39,517 bases of DNA from Octopus bimaculoides (GCF_001194135.2 NC_068989.1:20931744-20971260), one strand, 5' to 3'; positions 7,257 to 39,517 are shown, numbered from the stretch's first letter. Translations and numbers: made by a program. The notes: a model not told the origin generated them from the letters alone.

Positions 7257-7314
<58 letters not shown>

Positions 7315-7875: not shown

Positions 7876-7892
7876 TATTTATTTTTTTATTA

Positions 7893-7949
<57 letters not shown>

Positions 7950-7952
<3 letters not shown>

Positions 7953-8115
7953 TAGTTTTATTTTTATAACGTGCTTTCACTTCACTACCGAGCGCAGCTC
8001 TGTGTGCCTTGGGTATGTGCTGTGGTTTGCTGTGATGCTCTTATGGTTACTGTATTGAAAGTGTTTTGCGTAGGATGTGTGCAGTGCCCAGTAGTGCAAT
8101 TTTCTGTATGTTATA
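7950..8115 (-). mobile_element. R4/Dong-like LINE 3' end (last codons and 3' UTR), 5'-truncated, in (AAT)n
   Basis: Minus strand reads YNIQKIALLGTAHILRKTLSIQ*, then a 3' UTR ending AAAATAAAACTACTG-(AAT)n; same as 16269-16383 and 39293-39477. Confidence 0.8.
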
Positions 8116-8147: not shown

Positions 8148-8813
8148 GAGTGAGAGNNNNNNNNNNNNNNNNNNNNNNNNNNNNNNNNNNNNNNNNNNNN
8201 NNNNNNNNNNNNNNNNNNNNNNNNNNNNNNNNNNNNNNNNNNNNNNNNNNNNNNNNNNNNNNNNNNNNNNNNNNNNNNNNNNNNNNNNNNNNNNNNNNNN
8301 NNNNNNNNNNNNNNNNNNNNNNNNNNNNNNNNNNNNNNNNNNNNNNNNNNNNNNNNNNNNNNNNNNNNNNNNNNNNNNNNNNNNNNNNNNNNNNNNNNNN
8401 NNNNNNNNNNNNNNNNNNNNNNNNNNNNNNNNNNNNNNNNNNNNNNNNNNNNNNNNNNNNNNNCCATCCCGCTCAAAAAGGTCCCTGAATAAGGTTTGTT
8501 TAAGAATGTTGAGCAAATCACCCATGTTTCCAAAGGTGAATTATTCAAACCCCAAAGAATTCCTCTCAATACATGGCTATGATGCTCCCCCACTACTTCT
8601 GCTCATGATCAGAGATGCACATATCGTCAGCCACCAAGGGACATGCTCAACTGGTTAAAGTCAAACAACTGACAAGCAAATCTGTAGTATTGAGCAGAAT
8701 ATTTACTGTAGCCCAACTTTTATACCAAGACAAAACAATGTACATGATAACACTTCCAATAAGTTAAGATCAGATTTCATGAGAACCACTGCCTGGTACT
8801 GCATCAGGGTATT
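8148..8813 (-). mobile_element. ~560-bp (AAT)n-associated element, copy 2 (spans gap 8157-8463)
   Basis: GAGTGAGAG terminus at 8148; the body 8464-8813 matches copy 1. Confidence 0.75.
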
Positions 8814-10640: not shown

Positions 10641-11122
10641 TTCTCAAGTTTTGAGGGAATTTAGTCACTCATACGGTATGGTGTCATAGTTTAGAAGCTC
10701 GCTTTGCAGTCATTTGGTTTCATGTGCTGTCTCACCCCACTTCACTTTAAGCGTGTGACTTTTACTAAAGACCTAGGCTAACCAATGCCTTGCGAGTGAA
10801 TTTGGTGGACAGAAATTATATATATATATATATATATATATNNNNNNNNNNNNNATATATAATTTAATACAAGGTAAAATAGTTTCCTTTATAGGAGTGG
10901 AATATAGGAATGGAAAACATCCAATTTTCCACTGTTTTTCAGTAAATACGCAGAGAAAAAATTTTCACAGCTCAAAAGGTTATATATATTCAATATACAA
11001 AAATTAAAAGAAAATGGACATTCACGACTGACATATTTTAAATATGATTTATTAAATTAGTATCATATTACAATAATAATATAATATAATATAATATAAT
11101 ATAATATAATATGAATAGAAAT

Positions 11123-12895
11123 AGTGTGTGACAAGGCTGAAACTTCGAATTACAAGCACAATACATCATGTAAACAGTTTTCAATCGCCCATTTTCACTC
11201 AATTGAGAAAAAGTAGATCTGAGATTATCGAAAACAATAATTACTCATAATTCCACCTTGTGGGGTCTAACACAAGATCTTGTGGCTCTGTGGTTTCGTT
11301 ATATTGCGTCTACAATGAAGTTATAATACTCAAGTAACACACTAGCAATTAAAACAATGAAACTATAGGGTCATTCGATCTGCTGGAGATATCGACCAAA
11401 TCTTCTTCAAATTATATACTGCTGTTTTGGTAACAGAAGGACACTTTCTATAATGTAGTTTCAGGTCGATTTCTTCGACTGACCCTTTCAAGGTGGTATC
11501 TCAGCATGGCTGCAATCCAATGACAGACACAAATTGAGGAAGAAAGATAGTAGAAGCCATAGACTAATGTTTCATTGCAATTTCATTTTACCTTTTTTTT
11601 TAGTTATATGGTAAGATGTGATATGAATGATATAGGACTGATAAAAAAGAAGGCGAAAATGTTCTTCAGCATTTCAAGAAATTTTACTTAGGAAGGGGAA
11701 TGAACTCTGTTGTACTAAATGGCAGTAGTTTCCTTTAGAGTCTAAAGTTTAGACAATACTAAAATTATTTGTAAATATTCACTCACGTAACTGAGCGTCA
11801 AAGAAATGTAGCCAAGGGTAACGAACAATCGCATAGCTATTTTTTCTTTGAAGTAGTGGATTTTTCATCGGTTACTGATATTTATACAAAAAGAATTAAA
11901 AGAAAATGGAGATTTACGATTGACATATTTTGAATATAATCTATTAACATAATATCTTATTACAATTATAATATAATATAATATAATATAATATAATATA
12001 ATATAATATGATATGATATGATATAATATGATATAACATAATATAATATAATATAATATAATATAATATAATATAATATGATATGATATAATATAATATA
12101 ATATAATATAATATAATATAATAGAAATAGAAATACAAATATCAATCCTACAAATTGTTTCGATTCATGAACAATAATGCATTTATAAAAAATTCATATT
12201 TAATGAGTATGAATCTCATCAGGGAAGTATTTGACGCAATTAGACAGAATTACATGTAAGGATTGTTAATTCCTAGAATAGACTGAATTAGATATGTTTG
12301 TAAGCGTGAGCGTCAATAATTTAAACATATAATAACAATAAAAATAAATAATTCAAATAAATGTAAACTAGTATAAATGTAAATAAAAAATAGTATTCTT
12401 TAGCACATTTAATAGTACTAATCTAAAAATATTTCTGCCCATTATTATTTATATAAAAAATCTAAATAATATGCCAAGAATTTATGGCTGGCTGGGAAAT
12501 ATCTTCTTTTATTCTTTAGGAAGAAATATATTTTATTCAGAGAAAATATTTAGAAAAATCGTTAATCCATAAAAGAAAAAAAAAACAAAAAAAAAAAACG
12601 CGCTATTAATTATGCCTAAATAGCAAAAAAAAAAAAATCTTCTTTATTATAATAATACAATATCAATAAATAGAAGGGACAATACAGGACATTACAAACA
12701 AATAGTGTTCATGAGTTCGTTTAATGAGATTTTATACTTTTCGGCTGAGATGGCGCTGCAAAACACCTTTTCGAAAATATATATAATTCTAAGTGACTCA
12801 AAGTCACTGATCTAATAAAATAGAAACATTGTTGTTCCTAAGTCTCTCAACTAGAGATATTCAGTAGCAACACTCTAAAGTAACGATTTTTTGCA
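11123..12895 (+). repeat. left arm of a large imperfect inverted repeat
   Basis: 11123-11880 is the reverse complement of 13595-14679, and 12597-12895 is the reverse complement of 13305-13575 (e.g. AAACATTGTTGTTCCTAA / TTAGGAACAACAATGTTT). Confidence 0.85.
11968..12122. repeat. (ATAAT/ATGAT)n pentanucleotide microsatellite; shorter copy at 11075-11112
   Basis: Direct reading. Confidence 0.9.
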
Positions 12896-13304
12896 AACCT
12901 AATGTGGAAGTCCCATTTTGGGGTGAATGCGACAGGAGACATCGTTCTACAGTACACTTAGGTTCTGGTATCCTTATATTTTCGACCAAATCTTCTTCAG
13001 ACTATACACTGCTGTCTTGGTAACAGAAGGACACTTTCTATAATGTAGTTTCAGGTCGATTTCTTCGACTAACCCTTTCGAGGTGGTATCCCAGCATGGC
13101 TGCAGTCTAATGACGAACACAAATTGAAGGAGAAAGATAATAGAAGCCATAGTCTCCTTATAGGAGGAGGTTAGTACAGATACTGCTTAGTGCTGAGTGG
13201 GGGTGCTAACCTCCCCTGTTCGAAAATATAAGGACACAGATCGTGTTTCGTATTCCTAGCTGGAGATGATGTCTCCTGGGGTTAAACAACAGGAGCATTC
13301 GCCC

Positions 13305-14679
13305 CAAAATGTTCGTTACTTCAAAGTGCTACTACTTAATATCTCTTGTTGAGAGATTTAGGAACAACAATGTTTCTATTTTATAATAATATATTTGTGT
13401 CATTATGATAATCTATATTTATGGTTTCATTTTTTCGAAAGATATTTTCTTAATAAAACTAATTTTTATTATGATAGCAATTTTCGTGTAGGTGACTATA
13501 AATAATGAATAGAATGTAATTTATATTTTTATAATTATTTCTTTTGCTATTTAGACATAATTAATAGCGCGTTGTTTTTTTCTTTATATATATATCAGCA
13601 ACCCATGAAAAATTCACTGCCTCAAAGAAAAAATAGCTTTCCGATAGTTCGTTACCCTTGGCTACATTTCTTCGACATCCATGTCAAAAAGACAAAAAAA
13701 AAAAAAAAGCAAAAAAGAAAGAAAAAGACTTGAATAGTTTCGAACAAAACTAAGTACTGGGGGAGAGAAAATCGACTAAAATTTCTTGCCTCTGAGACCC
13801 CACAATAGCGGCAATAGAAAATAGTTGCATTTGTGTTTCATTTAGAAAGTTGTCACTCCGAATTTATGCAGTGCACCAAGAATCCTGTGTATTAACTAGT
13901 ACACTAATGTGTGTGTGTACATATATGCACGTTTTGGGATATGCTTACCTTTATGCTCTGCTGCGTAAGTGAATATTAAGAAATAACTTAGAGTATATTG
14001 TCTAAAGGAAACTGCCATTTAGTAGAACATAGTTATTCCCCTTGCTAAGTAAAACTTTTTGAAATGCTGAACAACATAATCGCAAATATTTATTTCCTTT
14101 TCTTGTTTACTGAAAACTTGCGATCGATGTTTTTTCTCATTTTCGCCTTCTTTTTTATATCATTCTATATCATTCATATCATATCTTACCATATAACAAA
14201 AAAAAAAAAAAGGTAAAATGAAATTGCAATGAAACATTAGTCTATGGCTTCTATTATCTTTTTTCTTCAAATTGTGTTCGTCATTAGACTGCAGCCATGG
14301 TGGAATACCGCCTTGTAAGGGTTAGTCAAAGAAATCGACATGAAACAGCATTATACTAAGTGTCCTTCTGTTACCAAAATAGCAGTACATAGTTTGAAGA
14401 AGATTTGGTCGATATTTCCAGCAGATCGAATGACTCCATAGTTTCATTGTTTTAATCGCTAGTGTGTTACTTGAGTATTATAACTTCATTGTAGACGCGA
14501 TATAACGAAACCACAGAGCCACGAGATCTCGTGTTAGACCCTACTAGGTGGAATTACGAGTAATAATTGTTTTCAATAATCTCAGATCTACTTTTCTGAA
14601 TGAGTGAAAATGGGCGATTGAAAACTGTTTAGATGATGTATTGTGCTTGTAATTCGAAGTTTCATCCTTGTCATACACT
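13305..14679 (-). repeat. right arm of the large imperfect inverted repeat
   Basis: Collinear reverse complement of the left arm, with private insertions at ~13680-13960 and ~14070-14140. Confidence 0.85.
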
Positions 14680-14929
14680 GTGTTGTGCTGAATTTACCTG
14701 AGAATTACACTAAAATGACAAGTGACGGCGGGATTCTCAATCTGCAAGGCCAGGAATTTCTGGGAATTATTCATTGGTCCTTCACCGAAATTCCTCCGGC
14801 GCAGACAAGCCGCATGATTCTTATCGATGCCTAAAATCTCCATGAGGGCGTTTGCCTACCACTAACCCCCGATAGAAATGTTAGTAAGTAAGTCTGCAGC
14901 TTTAATTGTGAATAGAGCCTGAAAGATAA

Positions 14930-16191
14930 AATCTGGTATTATAATATTACCGCCAGATGGCTGAGAAATAATTTGAGATACTAGAACCTAAGTGTACTGC
15001 AGTACTATAAGGTAATGGAATGAGTGCAAGCAAAGAATTAGGAATGTGCTCTAACCAAAACTAAAAGGAGAGAATATTGTCAAACCAAGGAATACATGGC
15101 TCATGCCAGTTTTAAAATACACTGGTCTTCTTCTAAAATGGTCAAAATCAAAGCTATAGGAATTAGACAGTACTAGGAAACTGCTTACTCAATGTAACAT
15201 TGACATGTACTTACAAAGAAAGGAAGGTGGCAGAGACTTGTAAATGCAGAAGACATTATTACTGCGATGCTGGCTTTGAAAAACTATGTTATGTGTTGTG
15301 AAGAAAGAATGCTATCTGCGACAAGAATTATCTAATACGTTACTGAAACAGTAAGAAAATTCAAGAGCAGGAGTAAGGGCAACAAAACATACAGATGGGA
15401 AAAGAATGAATTACAAGACCAATTCATGCAACATATCGCAGATATTGTAACAAAAGAATACTGGTTGTAGCTCACAGATGGGAACCTGAAACGTTGAACC
15501 AAATCGGTGATTATAGATGCTAAGAACAAGTCATTAGAACGAATTTGATAAAATTCAATTAGTGAATTAACGCAGAATCTGTGGCAAAAAGGAGGCGAAA
15601 GCATTACTCATCTCTTTAAGGAATGCAGAAAATTTGCATAAAAAGAGTATAAATGCAAGCATGGCTGTATCGGCAAAAGAGTGCATTGGCATGTTAACTG
15701 ACTGTACAAATACAAATTAACAGAAAAGTGATATGAATATGAGCTAGAGCCTGAATAATGAATAATAATTAGAAGATTCTTTATGGGATTTTCCCATAAA
15801 GAATGCCAATACTATTGAAGAAAGACGACTAAATATGATTATATTTCAATGCAGGAAAAAGCATTGTAAGATCATAAGCTTTTCAGTAATAAATTATGAT
15901 AAAATGAATACCAAAGAAATTGAGATGATTGTGAACTATCAGGATCTACCCAAAAAGATAAAGAGATTGTGAAAGGGAAAGATGACGATTGATCCTGTAG
16001 TAGTTGTTGCACTTGGAACAAATAGTACTTTAGGGGTGAAGTATATTGGAATTAAATCAAAGCATGATCGACTTGCAGAGAAGTGTCATTTTGCATTCTG
16101 CAAAAATCATAAGACTTTTAAGATTTGAACAAACTTGTCTTGACTTAAACTCGAGACAATGTCCCAAATAACTAAAGTAGCATGCAAAGCC

Positions 16192-16192
<1 letters not shown>
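14930..16192 (+). mobile_element. R4/Dong-like RLE LINE, 5'-truncated pseudogene (thumb, CCHC, endonuclease, 3' UTR) followed by (AAT)n
   Basis: MPVLKYTG...ELDSTRKLLT...MYLQRKEGGR; RICGKK..ESITHLFKEC..EYKCKHG...VHWH; ILWDFPI...RRLNMII...PVVVVALGT...LQRSVILHSAKIIR; many stops and frameshifts. Confidence 0.8.

Positions 16193-16263
<71 letters not shown>
16193..16263. repeat. (AAT)n microsatellite
   Basis: Direct reading. Confidence 0.97.
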
Positions 16264-16264
<1 letters not shown>

Positions 16265-16268
16265 CAGA

Positions 16269-16383
16269 GCACTTTCAATACAGTAACCATAAGAGCACCA
16301 CAGCAAACCACAGCACATACCCAAGGCACACAGAGCTGCGCTCGGTAGTGAAGTGAAAGCGCGCTATAAAAATAAAACTACTG
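16269..16383 (+). mobile_element. R4/Dong-like LINE 3' UTR stub
   Basis: CACTTTCAATACAGTAACCATAAGAGC...AAAATAAAACTACTG, matching 7950-8115 (reverse complement) and 39293-39477. Confidence 0.8.
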
Positions 16384-16401
16384 AATAATAATAATGATAA
16401 T

Positions 16402-16819
16402 AATTCCCTGATACAGTACCAGGCAGTGGCTTTCATGGCTTNNNNNNNNNNNNNNNNNNNNNNNNNNNNNNNNNNNNNNNNNNNNNNNNNNNNNNNNNNN
16501 NNNNNNNNNNNNNNNNNNNNNNNNNNNNNNNNNNNNNNNNNNNNNNNNNNNNNNNNNNNNNNNNNNNNNNNCTTAAACAACCCTTTTTCAGGGATCTTTT
16601 AAGTGGGATGGGCTACTCGACCTAAAGAAAATTCTAATTGGGCCCCGCCTACAAAGTCATGTGCTGTTAATCTTGATATTAGATCACCATGTCGCGCAGA
16701 TCTGCTTGTGATGCATGTAGCTGGAGTATCTTTATTAGATGGGTAGTAATGATGGGTCTACTGAGCTTGGTATATTTTACTCCAGTGTCACTTTGATGGC
16801 ATGCAATGTTCTCTCACTC
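16402..16819 (+). mobile_element. ~560-bp (AAT)n-associated element, copy 3 (spans gap 16442-16571)
   Basis: Starts AATTCCCTGATACAGTACCAGGCAGTGGC and ends CTCTCACTC-(AAT)n. Confidence 0.75.
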
Positions 16820-16868
<49 letters not shown>

Positions 16869-16905
16869 TATAAAAATAATAATAATAATAATAACGACAG
16901 AAAAG

Positions 16906-17459
16906 AATGCCCTGATGCACTACAAGGCACTTGCTATCATGGCTTCTGATCTTAACTGTTTGGAAGTGTTATCATGTACATGTTTTGTCTTGGTATAAAA
17001 GATGGGCTACAGCAAACATGCTTCTAAATACTAGATTTGCTTGTCAGCTGCTTGACCATAACTAGTTGAGCATGTCCCTTCGTGACCCACGATATATGAA
17101 CCTCTGACCAGGAGCAGAAGTAGTGGGGGAGCATCATAGCCATGTGTTGAGAGAAATTCTTTGAGGTTTGAATAATTCACCTCTGGAATCATAGGTGTTT
17201 CGTTCATCATCCTTAAACAATCCTTAAACAATCCTTATTCAGAGACCTTCTGCGCGTGATGGGCTACTTGACAAGAAGAAAATTCTAACTGGGCAACATT
17301 ATGTGTTGTTTATCTTGATACAAGATCACCATTTTCCGAACATATGGTTGTGATGCATGTGCCTGGTGTACCCTTTTCAGACGGGTAATCAAGTTGGGTA
17401 TATTGGGCTTCGTATATTATACACCAGTGTCACTTTGAAGGCATGCGCTGCCCTCTCAC
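16906..17459 (+). mobile_element. ~560-bp (AAT)n-associated element, copy 4
   Basis: Starts AATGCCCTGATGCACTACAAGG and ends CCCTCTCAC before (AAT)n; collinear with copy 1, with small indels. Confidence 0.8.
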
Positions 17460-17582
<123 letters not shown>

Positions 17583-18304
17583 GAACCATTGATCATGTTG
17601 TCTCCATGTGCAGTCTTCTTCCGCCTACAGAGTATCTCAACAGGCATAATAGAGCTGCACAGTATATTCACTGGAAAAGTTACAAAAACTTGGACCTACC
17701 CCATTATAAAAACTGGTGGGAACATAAACCACCACCAGTGCTTGATAATGATCACATCTCACTCCTCTGGAACTTCACCGTTCAAACTGACAGAAAGATA
17801 GATGCGAATAGGCCAGGCATTATATTGAAAATCTTTACACAAAAATCATGCCTCCTCATTGATATGACTGTCACAATCGACATAAATGTATCTGTCAAGA
17901 CCTACCAAAAACTGAGCAAGTATAAAGATCTTGAAATAGAAATTAGCAAAATGTGGAACCTGAAGACTAAAACAATACCTGTTGTCATAGGTGCCCTAGG
18001 AATGATAGCAAAAGGGGCATTTACCTACGTAGCTCAGATACCAGGAAACTCCAAAATGGCACAAATTCAAAAGATAGTGCTCACGGGAACTTTCCATATA
18101 CTACGTAAAATACTGTAATCTCAAAGTTTTAAAAAGCTTATAATGTTCTTATGTTTTCTTAAACATACTCTAGAACAATACTATGTGCAAAACCAAATAC
18201 ATGATACCCTAGGCATAACACCGACTTGGACTTCTAACTTGTTTCTTGAGGTCTCTGGATGAGACTTGGTGTCAACTTGTCCAAATACAAGCAAAAATCA
18301 AACG
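17583..18304 (+). mobile_element. R4/Dong-like LINE 3' fragment with open RLE endonuclease frame (ORF 17606-18118) and 3' UTR
   Basis: IDHVVSMC..EYLNRHNRAAQYIHW...LLWNFTVQTDRKIDANRPGII...CLLIDM...KLSKYKDLEIEI..MW...IPVVIGALG...IQKIVLTGTFHILRKIL*. The catalytic PD is mutated to PG. Confidence 0.9.
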
Positions 18305-22446: not shown

Positions 22447-22830
22447 GTTGTTGGCACTCCGTCCCTTACGACGTCGAGGGTTCCAGTTGATCCGATCAAC
22501 GGAACAGCCTGCTCGTGAAATTAACGTGCAAGTGGTTGAGCACTCCACAGACACGTGTACCCTTAACGTAGTTCTCGGGGATATTCAGCGTGACACAATG
22601 TGACAAGGCTGACCCTTTGAATTACAGGCATAACAGAAACAGGAAGTAAGAGTGAGAGAAAGTTGTGGTGAAAGAGTACAGCAGGGTTCGCCACCATCCC
22701 CTGCCGGAGCCTCGTGGAGCTTTAAGTGTTTTCGCTCAATAAACACTCACAATGCTCGGTCTGGGAATCGAAACCGCGATCCTATGACCGCGAGTCCGCT
22801 GCCCTAACTACTGGGCCATTGCGCCTCCAC
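22447..22830 (-). mobile_element. full-length tRNA-derived SINE (octopus OR-like family)
   Basis: Minus strand starts GTGGAGGCGCAATGGCCCAGTAGTTAGGGCAGCGGACTCGCGG...GGTTTCGATTCCCAG (A and B boxes), has a central domain and a 3' domain shared with 22996-23252, and ends in (ATGT)n. Confidence 0.9.
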
Positions 22831-22995
22831 TACATACATACATACATACATACATACATACATACATACATACATACATTCGTATATACATACATATCTT
22901 TGTTTATCTGAATATTTAACACAAGGTATTCACATACACATGCACAACTGAGCAATCTGTTAACAGAAACGTAATCTTGATTGTATCAAGTGAGG

Positions 22996-23615: not shown

Positions 23616-24470
23616 NNNNNNNNNNNNNNNNNNNNNNNNNNNNNNNNNNNNNNNNNNNNNNNNNNNNNNNNNNNNNNNNNNNNNNNNNNNNNNNNNNNNN
23701 NNNNNNNNNNNNNNNNNNNNNNNNNNNNNNNNNNNNNNNNNNNNNNNNNNNNNNNNNNNNNNNNNNNNNNNNNNNNNNNNNNNNNNNNNNNNNNNNNNNN
23801 NNNNNNNNNNNNNNNNNNNNNNNNNNNNNNNNNNNNNNNNNNNNNNNNNNNNNNNNNNNNNNNNNNNNNNNNNNNNNNNNNNNNNNNNNNNNNNNNNNNN
23901 NNNNNNNNNNNNNNNNNNNNNNNNNNNNNNNNNNNNNNNNNNNNNNNNNNNNNNNNNNNNNNNNNNNNNNNNNNNNNNNNNNNNNNNNNNNNNNNNNNNN
24001 NNNNNNNNNNNNNNNNNNNNNNNNNNNNNNNNNNNNNNNNNNNNNNNNNNNNNNNNNNNNNNNNNNNNNNNNNNNNNNNNNNNNNNNNNNNNNNNNNNNN
24101 NNNNNNNNNNNNNNNNNNNNNNNNNNNNNNNNNNNNNNNNNNNNNNNNNNNNNNNNNNNNNNNNNNNNNNNNNNNNNNNNNNNNNNNNNNNNNNNNNNNN
24201 NNNNNNNNNNNNNNNNNNNNNNNNNNNNNNNNNNNNNNNNNNNNNNNNNNNNNNNNNNNNNNNNNNNNNNNNNNNNNNNNNNNNNNNNNNNNNNNNNNNN
24301 NNNNNNNNNNNNNNNNNNNNNNNNNNNNNNNNNNNNNNNNNNNNNNNNNNNNNNNNNNNNNNNNNNNNNNNNNNNNNNNNNNNNNNNNNNNNNNNNNNNN
24401 NNNNNNNNNNNNNNNNNNNNNNNNNNNNNNNNNNNNNNNNNNNNNNNNNNNNNNNNNNNNNNNNNNNNNN

Positions 24471-25555: not shown

Positions 25556-27881
25556 TAGGGATACAACTTTTTTGCAACTCCATAGTCCTGTATTATATTC
25601 TGATGAGTTAGAAAACAATCAAAATCCATTGTTTTTTGTTTCGTATTTGATCAAAAAAGTTCACCCATGACTAACTTTGAAATTTTTATATTCGGTTGCA
25701 TTTGGGTGGATTTCCAAAAACTAGAACTCTGGTTGAATAATAAACAAAACATGGAAAAAGATCCAAAACATTTAATCCATAAGTGTTAAAAATATTGTAT
25801 TCTGCATTCCAGAACAATAAAAAGAAGGTAAGTCATATTAAGTCAAATTAGTCAATAGTCAAGTTTTGGCAAGTCTCATAGAGAGAACGAATCGCAATGG
25901 CATGTTGGCTTTGTTCTTTCATGACCATAATTGCTCGCTCACAGCATTGGTTGCTTCTGTTAATGTTTAGTTTTGAGGGCTCTTGTTTCCAGTGATTTTC
26001 CAAGCATTTCAAAGCAGTCTTGTAAGGTACTGAGGCTTGCGATAGCACTGCATAACCTTCAGCTCTATACACTTGGTCACTGAACCAGTGGTTCGCCCAG
26101 TCATATGACACGAACTGGCAGACCATCTGCAATCCTTCTGTCATATGTGGTGTAAGGGAAAATGCGAGAAGGGCTAAGATTGCTCACGAATTCCATCTGA
26201 CGTTACTAAAGTTCGGAATTTTCTGAAACTTGATGAAAGGTAGGTCGTTGTTTTCACGGAAGAACCTGAAGGTACGGGATAAATGGAACAGAAACTTCAT
26301 ATCATCTCTCCAGCCAGTTTGATCTTCAATGACACGAGTTCTATTCAGGAAAGAGATTTGGAGTTCTTCATAAACTTGTCGCGAGTTCTTTGACAAAAAG
26401 ATATTCGATGCTGGGTGAATTACCTGCGCCTGCTAGCTCCTCATCCATAGTAACGCGTAGGATTCTGCCCAAGACATGGTGTTGGCAGCTCACGAATTGT
26501 GGCTTGTTATAGCCTTTGCTCAAGAACATTCTCTGCAGTCTAGCCATTACCCTACTCTTTCGTCCTGTATTCACACTTGTATCAACAATAATAATTGAAA
26601 TCGAGTTTCACAAATGAAATTAGTCCAGGACGATTTTCAATCCTTCTACAATGATCTCAGCCTTGCCATCATACAGCTTCAGAGCAGCCAGCTTGATTTC
26701 ATTTCTTTCATTTTTGCTGACAACCGCTTGATATTCATTTCCGTCAATATGCTTACCATCGAAATGCAGGTTCCGTTTCTGATTGCGTAGCGTATCGATC
26801 AAGTGTTTCTTCATTTCATCAGGTTTCTTGAAGAGTGCCTTGTAAATGCCTTGCTGACTAGGAGCTGGGATATCTGACAACTGTTTGCGGATTTTCGCAG
26901 CTTTGTTGGTAGAGACGTTTGTTCCAGTTACAAGACTCGTACCAAATGCAGATTTGTTGTGACTTCTTGTGGAGGAATAAGTGCCATCAGTATCACTATC
27001 ATGTTGATCAACGCTGTCATCTTCACCATAATTGTACTCTTCAATCTCTTCTTCTTCAAAGTCACTGTCAGTATTCAGGTTTGATATAGAATGGGAGGTT
27101 TTAGCATTAGAGCATCTACTTCTCTTGGAAGGATGGATAGTGTGCTTGCTTGCAGATTTGCTTGTCGAATAACCCAATTTGCTCTTGCTTTGGAATACAG
27201 CTTTTTGTCATCAACATGGAGGTATTCACCGTGGACTTTGGTTATATCGAACAGTTCTAATGGCTCAAATTTTCCTTTCTTGTTGCATTTGTCATACAAA
27301 TGAAGCACATTTTCGATTGCTCGGAAATGATTGAAAAATTCAGTTTATCTCTCCACAATAGTGTCACTTCTCTTGATAATTCAGCCTTTAATTGATTTCC
27401 AAGAAACTGCTCCTTCAGTGGTATCCGACTTCTGCTGGCCTATGAGGCTTCTTCTACCGGTACATGACTTCTAGATGAATGGGGCTGGAACTGCACCAAA
27501 TTTTTCCATTTCTCCTTGTTTTTCTGAACAACTTCGAAGCTTTTCTTGAATGGCATACTTCTAGTAGACATGCAAATCTCACGCTGAAACCGACACAAGG
27601 GTGAAAATGAAAGAAAAACTTAATTATTTGCTTCATGACTAAGCATGATGTCTCAGCAATACAATCTAATCACCACTGAGATCTTATAAATGCTAAGAGT
27701 GCTGTGTAACCTTGCCCATATTCAAACAAGTTTTGCATAAGAATACAAACATAGATGCATGGGTAAACTTTTTTAAAGATGGCTCAAAAGTAAGTTCACT
27801 TTAGTTACTTATACATAACAGCTAATCTAAATATGATACAGAAAATTGTTTTTGAGGAAAAAATAAAAATTTGTATCCCTA
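25556..27881 (-). mobile_element. hAT-superfamily (hATm-like) DNA transposon, both TIRs present, transposase pseudogene
   Basis: TIRs TAGGGATACAACTTTT (25556-) and AAAATTTGTATCCCTA (-27881). Minus-strand frames give LFDI, LHFDGK (D 26758-60), DTSVNTG (D 26581-83), CQHHVL, VRWNS and CCERAI (E 25938-40), broken by stops and frameshifts. The subfamily assignment is recalled from motif patterns. Confidence 0.8.

Positions 27882-27913: not shown

Positions 27914-27993
<80 letters not shown>
27888..27993. repeat. (TCAA)n(TCTA)n microsatellite
   Basis: Direct reading. Confidence 0.95.
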
Positions 27994-28749
27994 GTCGAAT
28001 GAAAGTTTCAATAAAAAATGGATAAATGTGGCAAGAATGGTAAGAATGAAAGACGACACCATTTTAAGCATAGACTTGTAACAAAAAGAGACAAAAAGAG
28101 AGAAGNNNNNNNNNNNNNNNNNNNNNNNNNNNNNNNNNNNNNNNNNNNNNNNNNNNNNNNNNNNNNNNNNNNNNNNNNNNNNNNNNNNNNNNNNNNNNNN
28201 NNNNNNNNNNNNNNNNNNNNNNNNNNNNNNNNNNNNNNNNNNNNNNNNNNNNNNNNNNNNNNNNNNNNNNNNNNNNNNNNNNNNNNNNNNNNNNNNNNNN
28301 NNNNNNNNNNNNNNNNNNNNNNNNNNNNNNNNNNNNNNNNNNNNNNNNNNNNNNNNNNNNNNNNNNNNNNNNNNNNNNNNNNNNNNNNNNNNNNNNNNNN
28401 NNNNNNNNNNNNNNNNNNNNNNNNNNNNNNNNNNNNNNNNNNNNNNNNNNNNNNNNNNNNNNNNNNNNNNNNNNNNNNNNNNNNNNNNNNNNNNNNNNNN
28501 NNNNNNNNNNNNNNNNNNNNNNNNNNNNNNNNNNNNNNNNNNNNNNNNNNNNNNNNNNNNNNNNNNNNNNNNNNNNNNNNNNNNNNNNNNNNNNNNNNNN
28601 NNNNNNNNNNNNNNNNNNNNNNNNNNNNNNNNNNNNNNNNNNNNNNNATATATATATATATATATACATATATATCTATTACTTATTGATTATATTGAGA
28701 ACTAGTAACTGTAAGCGCATGTGTGTGAGAGGGCTGGGTGCAATCTACT

Positions 28750-29530: not shown

Positions 29531-31789
29531 AATATATATTTGAGAGCTATGCAAAATGTACAGGGAACATGTAATGCATTTGAGTACATACATACTAGAA
29601 CAGTTTTGAATTTGTCATGTTGCCAATATAAAAAGAGTTAGAAAAAAGCGGTCTTTTTATAAATTTGTCCAACGTCTATATATAGATATCATATGACATA
29701 ATTGATGGAATTGTTAAAACACAGCAACAGTTTTACTGCAGCTGGGGCTCTAGATTTCATATAAAAAAATTTATTTATAATATTTGATTAGTGAAGACTT
29801 TAATGTTCGTATTAATGAGCTATTTAATCCTGTGAATATTCTAAAAAATAAACTCAACTTGTATGCATACGTTAGATAATGTTTTAGAAAAGCAATGATT
29901 ACATATGAAAAATGTCATATCTTAGTACTTACTTAACAATGGCAATTACTTTATATTGATTGTTATTGTACTCTTACTTTTGATCTCTTGTCAGGGTTCT
30001 TGTGCTCGGTATAATATTACGTTGGTGATTATAGAACTCAACAGTAACAAATCTGTATTGCAACATTCAAATGAATATTTACAGAACAATGGTGCTTCTG
30101 ATCAATATCATCAGAATATGATTTCTTTTCTACGTTGTCTATCATTTTTGTCTCTCTTTCCTTCTTTCTTTCTCTTTCTTTCTCTTTCTCTCTCTATTTC
30201 TCTTTCTCTCTCTATTTCTCTTTTTCTCATCCTCTCTTATTTCTTTGTTGGCCTCTGCATTTTCCCCATTTTCCTTGACATGATTTCAGAAGAAAATCCA
30301 CTCCTCGTATAGGTATGCATTGTCTATTGGAATATGACTCATTTTGTTTCTTCTTCATTGCCTCTCTATCACTTTCGTCCTTCTCATACCTGCATTTACT
30401 TGCTTAAACAAGTTCACATGCCACGCGCATGCACCTCCCTTCACACACGCACGCATAAAAATATACGCAAACACACAAATAATCTCATACACATATACAG
30501 TGTAGTGTTGCCCACACAAAATATACGCATAAACTTATATGCAGTGTCACACTCACTGGTGATGATAATGCTCGAAAACATATATATGCACACATACATA
30601 TATACTATATACAGACGTACAATATATTCAGTACACGCAAACTAAAAAAGTCCGTCCACTCATAGACACCTGCGCACAAACTCATACACAGAAATATATA
30701 TATACGTGTATAAACATATATGTATTTGCTGCGACAGGTGAAGCAATTTATACAGTGCTGGGAGACGTGAATGAGTTAGAGCGATCCGAAAACAGAGGTA
30801 TTTATATTTTTACATACTTTTCGATTTATCTGGGTGACTTTTTCTCTGTACACACACACATACTCGAACATACACGCGCGCACACACGCATACACACACA
30901 CAAACACATAAACACAAGCACACACGCACGTGCACTCTCACACACACATACTTATATATATATATATATATNNNNNNNNNNNNNNNNNNNNNNNNNNNNN
31001 NNNNNNNNNNNNNNNNNNNNNNNNNNNNNNNNNNNNNNNNNNNNNNNNNNNNNNNNNNNNNNNNNNNNNNNNNNNNNNNNNNNNNNNNNNNNNNNNNNNN
31101 NNNNNNNNNNNNNNNNNNNNNNNNNNNNNNNNNNNNNNNNNNNNNNNNNNNNNNNNNNNNNNNNNNNNNNNNNNNNNNNNNNNNNNNNNNNNNNNNNNNN
31201 NNNNNNNNNNNNNNNNNNNNNNNNNNNNNNNNNNNNNNNNNNNNNNNNNNNNNNNNNNNNNNNNNNNNNNNNNNNNNNNNNNNNNNNNNNNNNNNNNNNN
31301 NNNNNNNNNNNNNNNNNNNNNNNNNNNNNNNNNNNNNNNNNNNNNNNNNNNNNNNNNNNNNNNNNNNNNNNNNNNNNNNNNNNNNNNNNNNNNNNNNNNN
31401 NNNNNNNNNNNNNNNNNNNNNNNNNNNNNNNNNNNNNNNNNNNNNNNNNNNNNNNNNNNNNNNNNNNNNNNNNNNNNNNNNNNNNNNNNNNNNNNNNNNN
31501 NNNNNNNNNNNNNNNNNNNNNNNNNNNNNNNNNNNNNNNNNNNNNNNNNNNNNNNNNNNNNNNNNNNNNNNNNNNNNNNNNNNNNNNNNNNNNNNNNNNN
31601 NNNNNNNNNNNNNNNNNNNNNNNNNNNNNNNNNNNNNNNNNNNNNNNNNNNNNNNNNNNNNNNNNNNNNNNNNNNNNNNNNNNNNNNNNNNNNNNNNNNN
31701 NNNNNNNNATGTTTATAAAAACGGATACATAATAACACAACTTTATTTAGCCAATAATGCGATCAGGATAAAAATAAGCTTTTTTTTCT

Positions 31790-32580: not shown

Positions 32581-32751
32581 AAATATATATATATAGTTTT
32601 TTTTTTGGTGGGGAAGAAGTAAAAACAAAGAGCGGGAAAATAGACCTAGTGAGAGGTTTATTTTCAATTATATTGTTTGTTTTGGAGACAAGAGAGGAAG
32701 AGGAAAAAAGAAAAAAGAAAATAGAGGGAGAAAAGTAAAGGGTGGGGAAAA

Positions 32752-32835
32752 GATAGATAGATAGACAGATAAATAAATAGATAGATAGACAGATAGATAG
32801 ATAGATAGACAGATAGATAGATAGATAGATCGATC

Positions 32836-32877
<42 letters not shown>

Positions 32878-32895
32878 CAGATAGATAGATAGATA
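32752..32895. repeat. (GATA)n microsatellite
   Basis: Direct reading. Confidence 0.95.
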
Positions 32896-35299: not shown

Positions 35300-36919
35300 N
35301 NNNNNNNNNNNNNNNNNNNNNNNNNNNNNNNNNNNNNNNNNNNNNNNNNNNACTTCAAAAGAAATTCACTCATAAAACTGCCCATGTCCGTTTTCATTTG
35401 ACGCCCACTTCAAAAGATCCCCTTTCCCCAAAACACATATTAAAAAAATATTTTCACTTATCCGGCCATTGATCGAGAGATAAAACACAAACCACCTCCT
35501 GCTGACTGCAAAACTCCCGCCAAATTAGCCGCAAAAAACACACACACGTCCATTTCATATGTCTTTCACTTTCTCTATGATTATACACACGTCCAATACA
35601 ATAGCTCTCACATACATTTTCGTCTTCAACAGGTATGTATCTATTCTATAATATAAATTATTTTCTATAAGCGCATAACAATTACCTATTCCACACATCT
35701 TCACTTAGCTTTTATCTTCACTTTTCTTTAATTGGATACGTCTGCTATTAATTCTAACATACAATTTCCCCGTTAATTCTGACAGCTTCATTTTCTGTTT
35801 AAGCAATTCTTAACGTCAACTTCTTAATGCTTCTTCTACTTTTTCCTAGTTACCATACTTACCGAGAACATCGATTAAAACTTTTTCTAATGCAATTCCC
35901 CTTTCTTCTGCCACTAACACAACCAGTTCCTTACACACCTTACAGGTTCTCATTCAAACTACATAATACGCAGAATTGTCTCATTAATACAATAGGGTGT
36001 TTTGAGGGAGATATGGCTGCTATTTCTACCAGGTCTACCTACCATGCAGAGGTCTGAACTTAAATTTTCATTCATAGATTTGCATTTCAAACATTTAACA
36101 TAATCTTTTCCATAAATAAACTATCGTAAAATTTTCTACTATGACCTAACATTTTCTATGTATGTGTGTGTACCTTAAAAGACGTGATTAGACAGAGGTC
36201 CAATAGAATAGTTCCCATAAACAGACTACCTAGAAATTCTTTCTTCACAACTCCTGAAGCTGTTTCCTGCAAAGATATTTTGGAAAGACTTCCGCCCTCC
36301 CAGCGTTGAGAAACACTGTTATAGATTATGCATAACCGAAACCGATCACAGCCACATCATCCAAACAGACCGGGTGAAACAGGGTTTAGATGCTAGTACA
36401 TAATATAAATATACAGTTGAAGGGAAAATAACAGCGCTATTCTTCTACAGATAGCATGTATTATAGAAGTGCTGTGTTTAAAACACAATTTATATCGTAA
36501 AGAGACAAAAATCATCTCTGCAGCGTGTAGCAAGTACGCCAGATTGGGGCGCCTATGCTTATGCCAACGAATATTGCTTGTTTCCAGTATATCATGTGCA
36601 CAAATGTCGTCTGCGTATGTGACTGGCAGTGAGCAAAGGCCATTGAGGTCGATACGTACGTATGTATGCATGTATGTAAGTATGCATGCCTGTATGTATT
36701 TACGGCCTCGTATTTATTAAGTGACTTTTTACCGGTTCGAATCAATTTATAGTTAGACATCATCGCACAACATACTGAAGCACATTATATTTGCATACAC
36801 CGTCAGAGGTCACATTCACGATGGGCAGTGGAGTGAACCATATCGTTATTTGTTTTCTGCGTCACTTGGGGTGATCGCCAACTCCTCCCTCATATCTATG
36901 ATTGGTAGTAATACATGAA

Positions 36920-36979
36920 CACACAAATGCAAACACACACACACGCACACACACACACACACACAAACACACACAGACA

Positions 36980-37023
<44 letters not shown>

Positions 37024-37035
37024 CACACACACACA
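36920..37035. repeat. (CA)n microsatellite
   Basis: Direct reading. Confidence 0.95.
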
Positions 37036-37225
37036 GGTAAATAAATAAATAGATGTAACTTTATACAGTAACACATATATGTTCCATTATGATATATTGT
37101 GGCATTAGAAAACAAGCGAAAATTAATTAAATTATTTTGCCTCAAGACTCATTCAAATATGTTTTTTTTAATAAAATACTTTTTCTTTCTTTCAGAATTC
37201 CGTCGACATTTTACCCATTCGTATC

Positions 37226-38715
37226 ATGGAAGGAATGAAATATATTTTAATAATTTCTCTATTAAAAACTTTTGTCCATGCAGAAGACCAGATAATTGAT
37301 ACTACCACTGGGAAGATTAATGGATCAACAGTTTTAGTTCAGAATGTTAAGCTTGATGTATTTCTTGGAATACCATTTGCGAAACCTCCCGTTGGTAATC
37401 TAAGATTTAGAAGACCTGAACAAATTGAACGGTGGAGTGGTATAAAAGAAACGAAGGAACATGTTTCGGCGTGTGCACAATTTGAAGATAATACGTTTAA
37501 TGATGTTCCAGGTGCAGATCTGTGGAAAATAAAAGCTAATATAAGCGAAGACTGTCTTTATTTAAATATTTGGACGCCAACAGAAGCACGGAAGTCCCGT
37601 TCAAATTTAACCACGATGATTTGGATATATGGAGGTGGATTTATATTTGGATCAAGCACGTTGGGCATATACGATGGAAAATGGTTAGCTGTCAGTCAAA
37701 ATATTATTGTTGCATCATTTAATTACAGATTAGGGCCCTTTGGTTTCCTTTCCTTAAATGACGAGCGTGCTCCAGGTAATATGGGACTGCTTGATCAAAA
37801 CCTCGCTATAAAGTGGATTCACGATAATATTGCATCATTCGGTGGAGACCCTGATAAACTGACACTGTTTGGAGAAAGTGCTGGTGCAGTATCTGTTAGT
37901 ATGCATGTTATTTCACCAATGTCTCGGAATCTTTTCAGGAATGCTATAATAATGAGTGGGACATCTAACGCTGACTGGGCAATTAAGACAAAAGAGGAAA
38001 ATATAAATAGAGCGAAAGAAATGGCTGCTTTCCTGAGATGTCCAACTGAGAACGATGAGCAGATGTTAAATTGCTTTCTAAATGCCAAAACTGAAAAACT
38101 ATCCCTGGGACAACTTCATAATTTAAAAGGATTCTTTGGAATTCCTTTTGCCCCCATTATCGATAACTATTTCTTACAAGCGAAGCCAAACAAAGCTCTA
38201 CAAAGTAAAGCAATTAAAAAAGATGTGTTAATAGGCTTTGTTAAAAATGAAGGCAGTCTTTTTCTTTTATCTGGTTTCCCCAAATATTTCACCACTAACA
38301 AAACTGTTCCAATAAACAATTCTCTCGCACATAAATTAATAAAAGAAGTGATTGAACCAGCACAAGTAAATTCTGTGCAGCTTGATTCCATCTTTTATGT
38401 TTATGGTTCTAATGTCTACTCCTCCTCTGAAACTGAAAAATACAGATACGTACTTGACCAAGTAGCTGGTGATACCATATTTAAATGTCCTGCTATTAAT
38501 TTTTCCCGGGAATGGAGTACCCATTCCAATGTTTACATGTATTCTTTTGAATATCGGTCAAATGATTCGCCCTGGCCGGAATGGATGGGTACCATACACG
38601 GAAATGATATATACTATGTGTTTTCGCAAGTGTTATATGGACAGAATTATTCATCAGAAGATAAAGGAGTGTCAGAAATGATGTCAAGTTATTTTGCAAA
38701 CTTTTCTAAATCAAG
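37226..38715 (+). CDS. cholinesterase-family (acetylcholinesterase-like) carboxylesterase, first coding exon; partial, C-terminal exon(s) outside the window
   Basis: Open frame of ~497 codons; signal peptide MKYILIISLLKTFVHA; GIPFAKPPVGNLRF; SEDCLYLNIW; WIYGGGF; FGESAG (S218); NEG (E342); WMGTIHG (H458); W100 (choline site); Cys pairs equivalent to Torpedo 67-94 and 254-265, plus C402. Acceptor TTTCTTTCAG ends at 37195 and donor AG|GTAAG follows 38715. The in-frame TAA at 38717 is intronic. Confidence 0.93.
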
Positions 38716-39182
38716 GTAAGATTGACTTGTATACGACATTTTGGTTTTGCTATTCTCGCCTTTATCTTGTCTCTTGTAATCTCTATATATCAAGAGAGGT
38801 TAATATGTTTATAACTCACACACATGCACAAACGTCATTCCGAAAATTTGCTTCTTGCGGGACAGTACCATGAATATTTAGTACCAGCTGCTGCTGTTGC
38901 TACTGCTGCTAAAGATGACATTGTCTTTCACGATGGCCAGCTGTTCCTTTCAGTGGACGAACAACTCTTGTTCGCCATCTTCCTACTTTTTGAGCAAAAA
39001 TCTGATGGGTACTTAGCCTAAACAAACTACAAAATAGCTCCAAAGGGTTACAGATGGAAAAGAACTAATCAATTCCCCTAGATCCTGGCTAGTTTATATA
39101 TGTAACAATAACAAATTTAATTTGTATAAATGTTTGTAACAAACTGAATAAGAACACACTCCGGGAGTAACGTGTCGATTAA

Positions 39183-39290
<108 letters not shown>

Positions 39291-39292
39291 AC

Positions 39293-39477
39293 ACCAGGAC
39301 TTACAAATATATATAACATACAGAAAATTGCACTACTGGGCACTGCGCACATCCTACGCAAAACACTTTTAATACAGTAACCATAAGAGCATCACAGCAA
39401 ACCACAGCACATACCCAAGGCACACAGAGCTGTGCTCGGTAGTGAAGTGAAAGCACGTTATAAAAATAAAACTACTG
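39293..39477 (+). mobile_element. R4/Dong-like LINE 3' end in (AAT)n, intronic
   Basis: PGLTNIYNIQKIALLGTAHILRKTLLIQ*, then the 3' UTR shared with 7950-8115 and 16269-16383, then (AAT/AAC)n. Confidence 0.85.
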
Positions 39478-39517
39478 AACAATAATAATAATAACAATAA
39501 TAATAATAATAATAATA

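What the first reader, a model, noticed from the sequence alone, without database searches (positions are those of the whole stretch)
37226..38715. Cholinesterase with a butyrylcholinesterase-like, de-aromatised gorge
Aligned by eye to Torpedo AChE, the triad (S218/E342/H458), oxyanion GGG and choline-binding W84 (W100) are intact. Six of the 14 gorge aromatics are replaced: Y121->I140, W279->L297 (no Trp anywhere in that loop), F290->I306, F330->L345, Y334->S349 and Y442->N460; Y70 is F. Four of these positions (121, 279, 290, 330) are the ones vertebrate BChE also lost. Prediction: an active enzyme with a weak peripheral site, little substrate inhibition and a wider acyl pocket, probably a lineage-specific paralogue convergent on BChE rather than the synaptic AChE. 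Possible roles (ester scavenging, secretion, or pairing with divergent cephalopod cholinergic-type receptors) are speculation.
Basis: partly seen in the sequence, partly recalled or inferred. Interest (0 to 1): 0.7.

Follow-up and report, generated by a model that had tools for sequence, protein, structure and literature searches.

The report
Octopus cholinesterase paralogue, first coding exon
This is the large first coding exon of one member of a clustered, fast-diversifying cholinesterase gene family in octopuses; its catalytic machinery is intact and its active-site gorge is partly stripped of aromatic residues, which makes it a new member of a well-known enzyme family rather than a new kind of thing.

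Summary
Window 37226-38715 (+) is an uninterrupted 496-codon cholinesterase exon with conserved splice sites.

The gene is not the canonical octopus AChE. It pairs with O. vulgaris P0010 (83% identity, 92-98% bootstrap) inside an expanded octopod clade. That clade has at least six loci per Octopus species, and several lie within about 350 kb on one chromosome.

The "BChE-like" reading is only partly supported.
- Positions 70, 121, 279, 288 and 290 vary in most cholinesterases, so overlap with BChE is expected.
- The unusual losses, Y334 and Y442, are residues that BChE keeps.
- F288 is retained and a Phe sits at position 400, so a wider acyl pocket is not shown.

The 14 gorge positions are hypervariable among the octopod paralogues, and dN/dS is about 0.5.

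Exons 2-3 lie beyond the window. Expression and kinetics are untested. Verdict: a new member of a known kind, of modest interest.

The parts
37180..37195 (+). Polypyrimidine tract and AG splice acceptor (tttttctttctttcag)
   Evidence: Read directly. The same ctttctttcag|AATT junction, 30 nt before the ATG, is conserved in five paralogous octopus loci.
37196..37225 (+). 30-nt 5' UTR part of the exon
   Evidence: Conserved in position and partly in sequence in L001-L005. There is no in-frame upstream ATG in the window.
37226..38715 (+). Coding part of the large first coding exon: 496 codons plus 2 nt of a split codon. It encodes the signal peptide and about 90% of the cholinesterase catalytic domain.
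   Evidence: ORF; Pfam PF00135 E=2.7e-142; PDB hits to BChE and AChE; AF2 model pLDDT 93.9, pTM 0.92; tblastn to octopus paralogues covers aa 1-496.
37226..37282 (+). Predicted signal peptide MEGMKYILIISLLKTFVHA (aa 1-19)
   Evidence: Hydrophobic N-terminus that precedes the position aligned to the mature N-terminus of Torpedo AChE. Lower pLDDT and helical in the model. The cleavage site is inferred, not computed.
37631..37639 (+). Oxyanion-hole GGG (G136-G138); the next codons give I140 (Y121) and F141 (S122)
37523..37525 (+). W100, the choline-binding Trp84, inside the C83-C110 omega loop
37874..37882 (+). E217-S218-A219 (Torpedo E199, catalytic S200, A201)
38114..38143 (+). Peripheral-site and acyl-loop segment: L297 (W279), F304 (F288 kept), I306 (F290)
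   Evidence: no Trp in residues 285-312.
38249..38272 (+). Catalytic E342 (E327), L345 (F330), F346 (F331 kept), S349 (Y334)
38480..38488 (+). F419 (Torpedo V400, BChE F398) and C421 (C402; its disulfide partner is encoded in a missing exon)
   Evidence: the role of position 400 is from PMC3045457.
38597..38608 (+). Catalytic H458 (H440), N460 (Y442), D461 (E443)
38716..38721 (+). Splice donor GTAAGA. The ORF's 'stop' TAA (38717-38719) lies inside it.
   Evidence: The paralogues end the exon at the same place with TCAGG|GT(A/G)AG. The intron position matches the region where the PDB alignments end (Torpedo residue about 480).

Best explanation
The feature is exon 1 (37196-38715) of a protein-coding gene in an octopod-lineage expansion of the cholinesterase family. 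In Octopus this family is a cluster of three-coding-exon genes: about 1.48 kb, 189 nt and about 90 nt. The window's copy is the counterpart of the O. vulgaris gene behind protein P0010. It belongs to 'group A' together with P0001/P0003 and P0002.

Shown:
- An intact reading frame and intact splice sites.
- An intact Ser-Glu-His triad, oxyanion hole, E199, D72 and Trp84.
- Two complete disulfides.
- A confident cholinesterase fold.

Inferred:
- It is a glycosylated, secretory-pathway serine esterase that still binds and hydrolyses choline esters.
- Loss of Y121, W279 and Y334, together with F330L and Y442N, should remove most aromatic stacking at the gorge rim and bottleneck. This predicts weak binding of peripheral-site and bis-quaternary ligands and little substrate inhibition.
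- The acyl pocket keeps two Phe (F304 and F419) with Ile at 290. I therefore expect an intermediate rather than BChE-like acyl specificity.
- By analogy with its paralogues' third exon, which encodes a hydrophobic C-terminus after an SGS motif, the mature protein is probably GPI-anchored. That exon is outside the window.

Biological role: most likely a non-synaptic ecto-esterase, one of a set whose ligand-contacting gorge residues are diversifying among paralogues.
For: Identity and fold:
- Pfam and PDB homology.
- AF2 pLDDT 93.9; TM 0.89-0.91 to AChE and BChE.
- Residue map.

Gene structure:
- Splice sites conserved with five paralogous loci.
- Three-exon structure of the paralogues, and absence of exons 2-3 from the window.

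Phylogeny:
- The window pairs with P0010 at 92-98% bootstrap.
- Group A is supported at 100% in the 3' half.
- The canonical P0007/8 group and P0015/16 lie outside.

Clustering:
- O. vulgaris P0001, P0017, a double-domain model and P0005 lie between 56.24 and 56.59 Mb of OX597822.1.
- O. bimaculoides P0004 and P0003 lie between 20.81 and 21.04 Mb of CM046609.1.

Selection:
- dN/dS is 0.48-0.54 against the paralogues, that is below 1.
- The stop-free stretch is 514 codons against at most 195 elsewhere in the window.

Gorge diversification:
- The 14 gorge positions are more variable than average in the expanded clade (entropy 1.41 vs 0.89, P about 0.009).
- In non-cephalopod cholinesterases the same positions are less variable than average (1.28 vs 1.58).

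Mutagenesis background for positions 288, 290, 70, 121 and 330 comes from PMC3045457.
Against: - Only exon 1 is in the window, so the integrity of the whole gene, the third disulfide and the C-terminal anchor are unverified.
- There is no expression or activity evidence. No protein at 90% identity or more is in the 5.8-billion-protein collection, and the exact ORF is not on record.
- The O. vulgaris counterpart P0010 is a broken model that lacks about 120 internal residues. This could be an annotation or assembly fault, or a damaged gene.
- dN/dS of about 0.5 is high for an essential enzyme and is compatible with relaxed constraint.
- The pairwise dN/dS values are not specific to the window's own branch.
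- The near-invariant Gly at the exon 1/2 junction is replaced: the split codon is AG|N instead of GG|N.
- Y442N, Y334S and F330L might disturb the positioning of W84 and lower activity on choline esters.
Confidence: 0.75

Rival explanations
1. A true functional analogue of vertebrate BChE: a wide acyl pocket, efficient butyrylcholine hydrolysis, iso-OMPA sensitivity and no substrate inhibition, arrived at by adaptive convergence.
For: Four of the six lost aromatics coincide with BChE losses (PMC3045457). Eight of the 14 aromatics remain, the same number as in BChE. F290I alone raises iso-OMPA reactivity about 200-fold in mouse AChE (PMC3045457).
Against: - F288 is retained and F419 sits at position 400, so two Phe remain in the acyl pocket.
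- BChE keeps Y332 and Y440, which this protein has lost.
- The shared positions vary across most cholinesterases.
- Sister paralogues carry many different residue sets, which looks like diversification rather than convergence on one solution.
- The gene is not orthologous to BChE.
Confidence: 0.12
2. A decaying or silent duplicate (an incipient pseudogene) in a tandem array. The aromatic losses would then reflect relaxed constraint rather than function.
For: - dN/dS is about 0.5.
- The O. vulgaris counterpart has a broken gene model.
- No matching protein or transcript-derived sequence is in the collections.
- The conserved junction Gly is lost.
- Other cluster members have lost E199, W84, W432 or G117.
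Against: - 496 codons stay open in 36% GC DNA in which other stop-free stretches reach at most 195 codons.
- The acceptor and donor are intact.
- All catalytic residues are intact, as are D72, E199, W84 and five Cys.
- dN is significantly below dS. My own rough estimate from the values gives Z of about 3.9 for the comparison with P0001.
Confidence: 0.1
3. It is the canonical (synaptic) octopus acetylcholinesterase.
For: Best PDB and database hits are AChE and BChE. The choline-binding site and triad are intact.
Against: - The published O. vulgaris AChE cDNA product (P0008, A0A075D677) and its O. bimaculoides counterpart P0007 form a distinct clade and are only 63-64% identical to the window's protein.
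- That clade keeps F279, Y290, Y330, Y334 and Y442.
- Caveat: I could not place the squid optic-lobe AChE (Talesa 1999, cited in PMC3264636). It did not appear among close relatives of P0016.
Confidence: 0.02
4. A non-catalytic cholinesterase-domain adhesion protein of the neuroligin, gliotactin or glutactin type.
For: Such proteins share the fold, and some octopod paralogues show erosion of the active site.
Against: In this copy the triad, oxyanion hole and E199 are all intact. All top hits are cholinesterases, not neuroligins.
Confidence: 0.01

Closest known systems
Octopus 'cholinesterase 2-like' genes: O. vulgaris P0010 (hypothetical predicted protein) and P0001, O. sinensis P0002, O. bimaculoides P0003
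   Same: - 83% identity to both halves of P0010, 73% to P0001 and 70% to P0002.
- Same exon structure and the same splice junctions.
- The same group-A signature: Y442->N/S, and Y121->I (V in P0002).
- The O. vulgaris and O. bimaculoides relatives that could be mapped lie in one chromosomal cluster per species.
   Different: - No identical or 90%-identical protein is on record.
- The window's copy alone has F141 (S122F) and L297.
- Unlike P0001, P0002 and P0003, it keeps D72 and E199, and it has Phe at position 288.
- P0010 has Y70 and S442 where the window has F and N.
Octopus vulgaris acetylcholinesterase cDNA (Fossati et al. 2014; A0A075D677 = P0008) and its O. bimaculoides counterpart P0007
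   Same: Same family, same three-exon layout and C-terminal hydrophobic tail, 63-64% identity. F at position 400.
   Different: - The canonical proteins keep aromatics at 279 (F), 290 (Y), 330 (Y), 334 (Y) and 442 (Y). They have L288 and a GGA oxyanion motif.
- They form a separate, shorter-branched clade.
Vertebrate butyrylcholinesterase (e.g. human BChE, PDB 1P0I)
   Same: About 40% identity and TM about 0.89. Eight of 14 gorge aromatics remain. Non-aromatic residues at 121, 279, 290 and 330. D70/D72 kept. Phe at position 398/400.
   Different: Not orthologous. It keeps F288 and F70 where BChE has L286 and N68, and it has lost Y334 and Y442, which BChE keeps as Y332 and Y440. The C-terminus is probably GPI-type rather than a tryptophan-amphiphilic tetramerisation peptide; this is inferred from the paralogues.
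Atypical, intermediate cholinesterases with one acyl-pocket Phe (medaka atypical BChE, PMC3045457; amphioxus ChE2, from my own knowledge)
   Same: One of the two acyl-pocket Phe is kept. The peripheral site is partly de-aromatised. The medaka enzyme is GPI-anchored. Intermediate substrate specificity is expected.
   Different: - Medaka keeps F290 and loses F288; here it is the reverse.
- Medaka keeps Y334 and Y442.
- The duplications are independent and in different phyla.
Torpedo and mammalian acetylcholinesterase
   Same: Triad, oxyanion hole, E199, W84, D72, the disulfide pattern and the overall fold, TM 0.90-0.91.
   Different: Six of the 14 gorge aromatics are replaced, including the core peripheral-site Trp279 and the bottleneck residues Y121 and F330.

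Membership tests
Type-B carboxylesterase / cholinesterase superfamily (Pfam PF00135, alpha/beta hydrolase) | A significant match to the family profile over the whole domain, and an alpha/beta-hydrolase fold | tested here: met
   E=2.7e-142, 475.8 bits against a cut-off of 27, residues 21-496. AF2 pLDDT 93.9; Foldseek TM 0.89-0.91 to cholinesterases.
Cholinesterases (AChE/BChE clade) | Ser-Glu-His catalytic triad in the GESAG context | tested here: met
   S218 (in FGESAGA), E342 and H458.
Cholinesterases (AChE/BChE clade) | Oxyanion hole G118, G119, A201 and the adjacent E199 | tested here: met
   G137, G138, A219, E217.
Cholinesterases (AChE/BChE clade) | Choline-binding Trp84 on the Cys67-Cys94 omega loop | tested here: met
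   W100 lies between C83 and C110, and the loop has the same length as in Torpedo.
Cholinesterases (AChE/BChE clade) | Three conserved intrachain disulfides | tested here: inconclusive
   C83-C110 and C272-C283 are present. C421 (C402) is present, but its partner (C521) would be encoded in exon 2, outside the window.
Cholinesterases (AChE/BChE clade) | Closest relatives are cholinesterases rather than carboxylesterases or neuroligins | tested here: met
   The top 60 PDB hits listed are all AChE or BChE. The top database hits are named cholinesterase or acetylcholinesterase. In the tree the protein nests in a cephalopod cholinesterase clade.
Cholinesterases (AChE/BChE clade) | Hydrolysis of choline esters that is inhibited by eserine (physostigmine) | not testable with these tools
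   Needs a recombinant enzyme assay.
Acetylcholinesterase sensu stricto (EC 3.1.1.7) | Gorge lined by 14 aromatic residues, including the peripheral site Y70/Y121/W279 and the acyl-pocket residues F288/F290 | tested here: not met
   8 of 14 are aromatic. I140, L297, I306, L345, S349 and N460 replace aromatics.
Acetylcholinesterase sensu stricto (EC 3.1.1.7) | Orthology with the canonical octopus AChE | tested here: not met
   P0007/P0008 form a separate clade at 98-100% bootstrap. The window groups with P0010, P0001 and P0002.
Vertebrate butyrylcholinesterase (EC 3.1.1.8) | Orthology with vertebrate BCHE | tested here: not met
   Vertebrate BChEs cluster with vertebrate AChEs, far from the cephalopod clade.
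Vertebrate butyrylcholinesterase (EC 3.1.1.8) | Both acyl-pocket positions (288 and 290) aliphatic | tested here: not met
   F304 is retained at 288; only 290 is aliphatic (I306). F419 sits at position 400.
Vertebrate butyrylcholinesterase (EC 3.1.1.8) | Butyrylcholine hydrolysed as well as or better than acetylcholine; no substrate inhibition; sensitivity to iso-OMPA and ethopropazine | not testable with these tools
   Kinetic assay required.
GPI-anchored (H-type) cholinesterase subunit | A C-terminal exon that encodes an omega site followed by a hydrophobic tail | not testable with these tools
   Exons 2-3 are not in the window. The paralogues P0001, P0005, P0008 and P0010 end in ...SGSQNIWTFQ followed by a hydrophobic stretch.

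The most novel reading that the evidence does not exclude
The octopod cholinesterase cluster, this gene included, may not be a set of redundant acetylcholine hydrolases. It may instead be a diversifying family of surface-anchored esterases whose ligand-contacting gorge residues (70, 72, 121, 279, 288, 290, 330, 334, 442) are under diversifying selection. The function could be perireceptor clearing of tastants and odorants in suckers or skin, or scavenging of dietary or prey ester toxins. It would have evolved in parallel with the octopus expansion of nicotinic-receptor-like chemotactile receptors, and the scaffold would be kept uniform by gene conversion of the 5' half of the exon.
Probability: 0.1. 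Interest if true: 0.65.

Novelty: new member of a known kind. Interest (0 to 1): 0.33.

Why it matters
On its own the gene is another invertebrate cholinesterase paralogue. Cholinesterase duplications with partly de-aromatised gorges are already known in nematodes, amphioxus, teleosts, ticks, spiders and schistosomes.

What may be worth a short comparative study is the context uncovered here:
- Octopods carry a clustered family of at least six cholinesterase genes, and Argonauta has several paralogues of its own.
- The 14 gorge-lining positions are, as a set, more variable than the rest of the protein, and three of them (72, 288, 334) are among its most variable positions.
- The 5' half of the big exon appears to be homogenised by gene conversion.

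None of my five octopus- or cephalopod-focused searches of the open-access and preprint library (of eight searches in all) found a paper describing this expansion.

There is also a practical point. 'AChE activity' is used as a biomarker and as a regeneration marker in octopus. It may be the sum of several enzymes with different substrate and inhibitor profiles.

Tried and rejected
- Exons 2-3 and other cholinesterase exons in the window. tblastn with eight cephalopod cholinesterases found only exon 1.
- The O. vulgaris orthologue locus. Look-ups of P0010 and P0002 failed with 'not on record'. The 10-kb flanks of P0001, P0005, P0017, P0003 and P0004 do not contain it. A window-branch-specific dN/dS could therefore not be computed, and the P0010 exon could not be checked for intactness.
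- Source species. The exact 497-aa ORF is not on record, and no protein at 90% identity or more was found. The window does not overlap any fetched locus. The species is therefore inferred only. Divergence from O. vulgaris (83% aa) matches O. bimaculoides-O. vulgaris orthologue pairs (82-89%). The pattern of N gaps resembles the O. bimaculoides assembly.
- Structure. The AF2 model and Foldseek search confirm the fold but cannot separate AChE-like from BChE-like. Coordinates are not exposed, so gorge or acyl-pocket volume could not be measured.
- Literature. Five searches on octopus or cephalopod cholinesterase paralogues, gene-family expansion, salivary-gland proteomes and sucker esterases found nothing on this family. 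The Fossati 2014 paper is not held.
- Squid optic-lobe AChE. I tried to link P0015/P0016 to the biochemically characterised squid enzyme. A second homology search with P0016 returned no named decapodiform sequence, so that relationship stays open.
- Other ORFs in the window gave no credible Pfam hit.
- Rejected readings: the canonical AChE, a non-catalytic cholinesterase-domain protein, and orthology with BChE (see the rival explanations).

Full report
**What is there.** Window 37226-38719 (+) is a 497-codon ORF. It is by far the longest stop-free stretch in a 39.5-kb, 20-41% GC, repeat- and gap-rich eukaryotic window: 514 codons against at most 195 elsewhere. It is one exon.
- A polypyrimidine tract and an AG acceptor end at 37195.
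- 30 nt of 5' UTR precede the ATG at 37226.
- The exon ends at 38715 (AAATCAAG|GTAAGA), so the ORF's stop codon is part of the splice donor.
- Both junctions are conserved, to the base, in five paralogous octopus loci.

The product matches Pfam COesterase at E=2.7e-142 and solved BChE and AChE structures at 1e-120 to 1e-99. An AlphaFold2 model built on 113 homologues is confident, with pLDDT 93.9 and pTM 0.92. It superposes equally well on human BChE and Torpedo AChE, at TM 0.89-0.91.

**Check of the observation.** The alignment was numbered through an electric-ray AChE, which follows Torpedo numbering.
- Kept: S218/E342/H458, G136-G138 plus A219, E217 (E199), D88 (D72) and W100 (W84).
- Replaced: Y121->I140, W279->L297, F290->I306, F330->L345, Y334->S349, Y442->N460. 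Y70 is F86.
- Aromatics kept: W114, Y130, W233, F288 (F304), F331 and W432, so 8 of 14 remain.
- Residues 285-312 contain no Trp.
- BChE lacks aromatics at 70, 121, 279, 288, 290 and 330 (Table 1 of PMC3045457), so four positions overlap as claimed.

**What it belongs to.** The nearest proteins are octopod 'cholinesterase 2-like' entries:
- O. vulgaris P0001, 73% identity
- O. sinensis P0002, 70%
- O. bimaculoides P0003, P0004, P0006 and P0007, 64-65%
- the published O. vulgaris AChE cDNA product P0008, 63%
- five Argonauta hians proteins, 55-59%

O. vulgaris P0010 is a gene model that lacks about 120 internal residues. It matches both ends of the window's protein at 83%. That equals the identity of O. 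bimaculoides-O. vulgaris orthologue pairs in this family, 82-89%.

In neighbour-joining trees the window pairs with P0010 at 92-98% bootstrap. The pair sits in a group with P0001/P0003 and P0002. The P0007/P0008 (AChE) clade and two unnamed, probably decapodiform, sequences (P0015/P0016) lie outside the expanded clade.

The paralogues are clustered.
- In O. vulgaris, P0001, P0017, a 1189-aa double-domain model and P0005 lie between 56.24 and 56.59 Mb of one chromosome.
- In O. bimaculoides, P0004 and the two genes fused in model P0003 lie between 20.81 and 21.04 Mb.
- Each gene has three coding exons. The window holds only the first.
- The source species could not be identified. Divergence and the style of the assembly gaps are compatible with O. 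bimaculoides.

**Is it functional?** dN/dS against the paralogues is 0.48-0.54. That is below 1 but high, so purifying selection is relaxed or is mixed with diversification. This copy keeps every catalytic element. Unlike most members of the expanded clade, it also keeps D72, E199, W84, W432 and a GGG oxyanion motif. I therefore expect an active choline-ester hydrolase. Against this:
- Exons 2-3 are unseen.
- The O. vulgaris counterpart has a broken model.
- No transcript-derived protein matches.
- The near-invariant Gly at the exon junction is changed: AG|N instead of GG|N.

**How far is it 'BChE-like'?** Only partly.
- Among 100 non-octopod homologues, positions 70, 121, 279, 288 and 290 are variable everywhere: W279 is present in 38 and Y121 in 19. 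Overlap with BChE therefore says little.
- The rare changes are Y334S (Y in 97 of 100), Y442N (Y in 82 of 100) and F330L. BChE keeps the first two.
- The acyl pocket keeps F304 and also has F419 at position 400. PMC3045457 notes that an aromatic at 400 normally faces an aliphatic 288, and that invertebrate acyl pockets use alternative aromatics. A widened pocket is therefore not demonstrated.
- The weak peripheral site is a sound inference. Loss of Y121, W279 and Y334 removes most stacking partners, although D72 is retained.

Within the expanded octopod clade the 14 gorge positions are more variable than the protein average (entropy 1.41 vs 0.89, P about 0.009). Positions 72, 288 and 334 fall at or above the 98th percentile. 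In non-cephalopod cholinesterases the same positions are less variable than average. The pattern is diversification among paralogues, not convergence on one BChE-like solution.

**Side finding.** Synonymous divergence between the window's exon and distant cluster members is about three times lower in codons 1-250 (0.23-0.31) than in codons 251-496 (0.70-0.77). Trees for the two halves also disagree. The 5' half groups the paralogues by lineage. The 3' half groups the Argonauta paralogues with Octopus group B at 91%. This points to gene conversion of the 5' half, and it makes duplication dating from full-length trees unreliable.

**Literature.** The octopus AChE of Fossati et al. is known (cited in PMC5430041), and so is a squid optic-lobe AChE (Talesa 1999, cited in PMC3264636). 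None of my five octopus- or cephalopod-focused searches found a paper describing the octopod cholinesterase cluster. The relation of the squid enzyme to this family could not be settled.

**Verdict.** This is a new member of a known kind. It has modest interest on its own and somewhat more as an entry point to a diversifying octopod cholinesterase cluster.

Noticed in passing
window 37144-38026 versus 38027-38715; loci L002, L004, L005: Synonymous divergence from distant cluster paralogues is about three times lower in the 5' half of the exon (dS 0.23-0.31) than in the 3' half (0.70-0.77). Nucleotide similarity extends 45-80 nt upstream of the ATG. Trees for the two halves give different topologies. 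This suggests gene conversion (concerted evolution) of the 5' half among paralogues.
   Followed up: partly
window 38714-38717: The split codon at the exon end is AG|N (Ser or Arg). All five paralogous loci have GG|N, a Gly that is at least 90% conserved across 113 cholinesterases.
   Followed up: partly
window 37646-37648 (F141): S122 (Torpedo numbering) is Phe here. The other octopod sequences have S, A, V or L, and the likely orthologue P0010 has S. A new aromatic next to the lost Y121 might partly refill the gorge. This could not be checked without model coordinates.
   Followed up: no
L003 (O. bimaculoides CM046609.1 20.986-21.049 Mb); proteins P0003, P0010, P0017: Several public gene models in this family are faulty. 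P0003 fuses two neighbouring genes across N gaps (10307-18147 and 41727-42380). P0010 lacks about 120 internal residues. P0017 starts at an internal Met although the full exon is intact in L004 at 9620-11098.
   Followed up: partly
Proteins P0001-P0006, P0011-P0014, P0017 (octopod paralogues): Many expanded-clade members have changes in core catalytic-site residues: E199->Q or H in seven, W84->F or M in two, W432->L in three, G117->A in one and W233->N in one. Some paralogues may have altered or reduced cholinesterase activity.
   Followed up: no
window 36933-37035, 39184-39291, 32751-32895: Long microsatellites flank the exon: (AC)51 about 160 nt upstream of the acceptor, (TAA)36 about 470 nt downstream of the donor, and (AGAT)36 further upstream.
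   Followed up: no
window 4054-4332, 5773-6157, 8157-8463, 10842-10854, 16442-16571, 23616-24470, 28106-28647, 30972-31708, 35300-35351: There are nine assembly gaps (N runs of 13-855 nt). The style matches the gap-rich O. bimaculoides locus L003. Together with the divergence from O. vulgaris, this hints at the source species without proving it.
   Followed up: partly
window 7300-7473, 17307-17476, 7875-8115, 16265-16404, 39278-39517, 22454-22831, 27992-28105: Dispersed repeats, 88-98% identical to elements in the introns and flanks of other octopus cholinesterase loci (L002-L004). Some occur in both orientations within the window. They are probably SINE or other transposable-element copies.
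   Followed up: no
window 17606-18118 (+), 26620-27177 (-), 9509-9844 (-): ORFs of 111-185 aa with no Pfam match. They are possibly transposable-element remnants. No other recognisable gene lies in the 37 kb upstream of the cholinesterase exon.
   Followed up: partly
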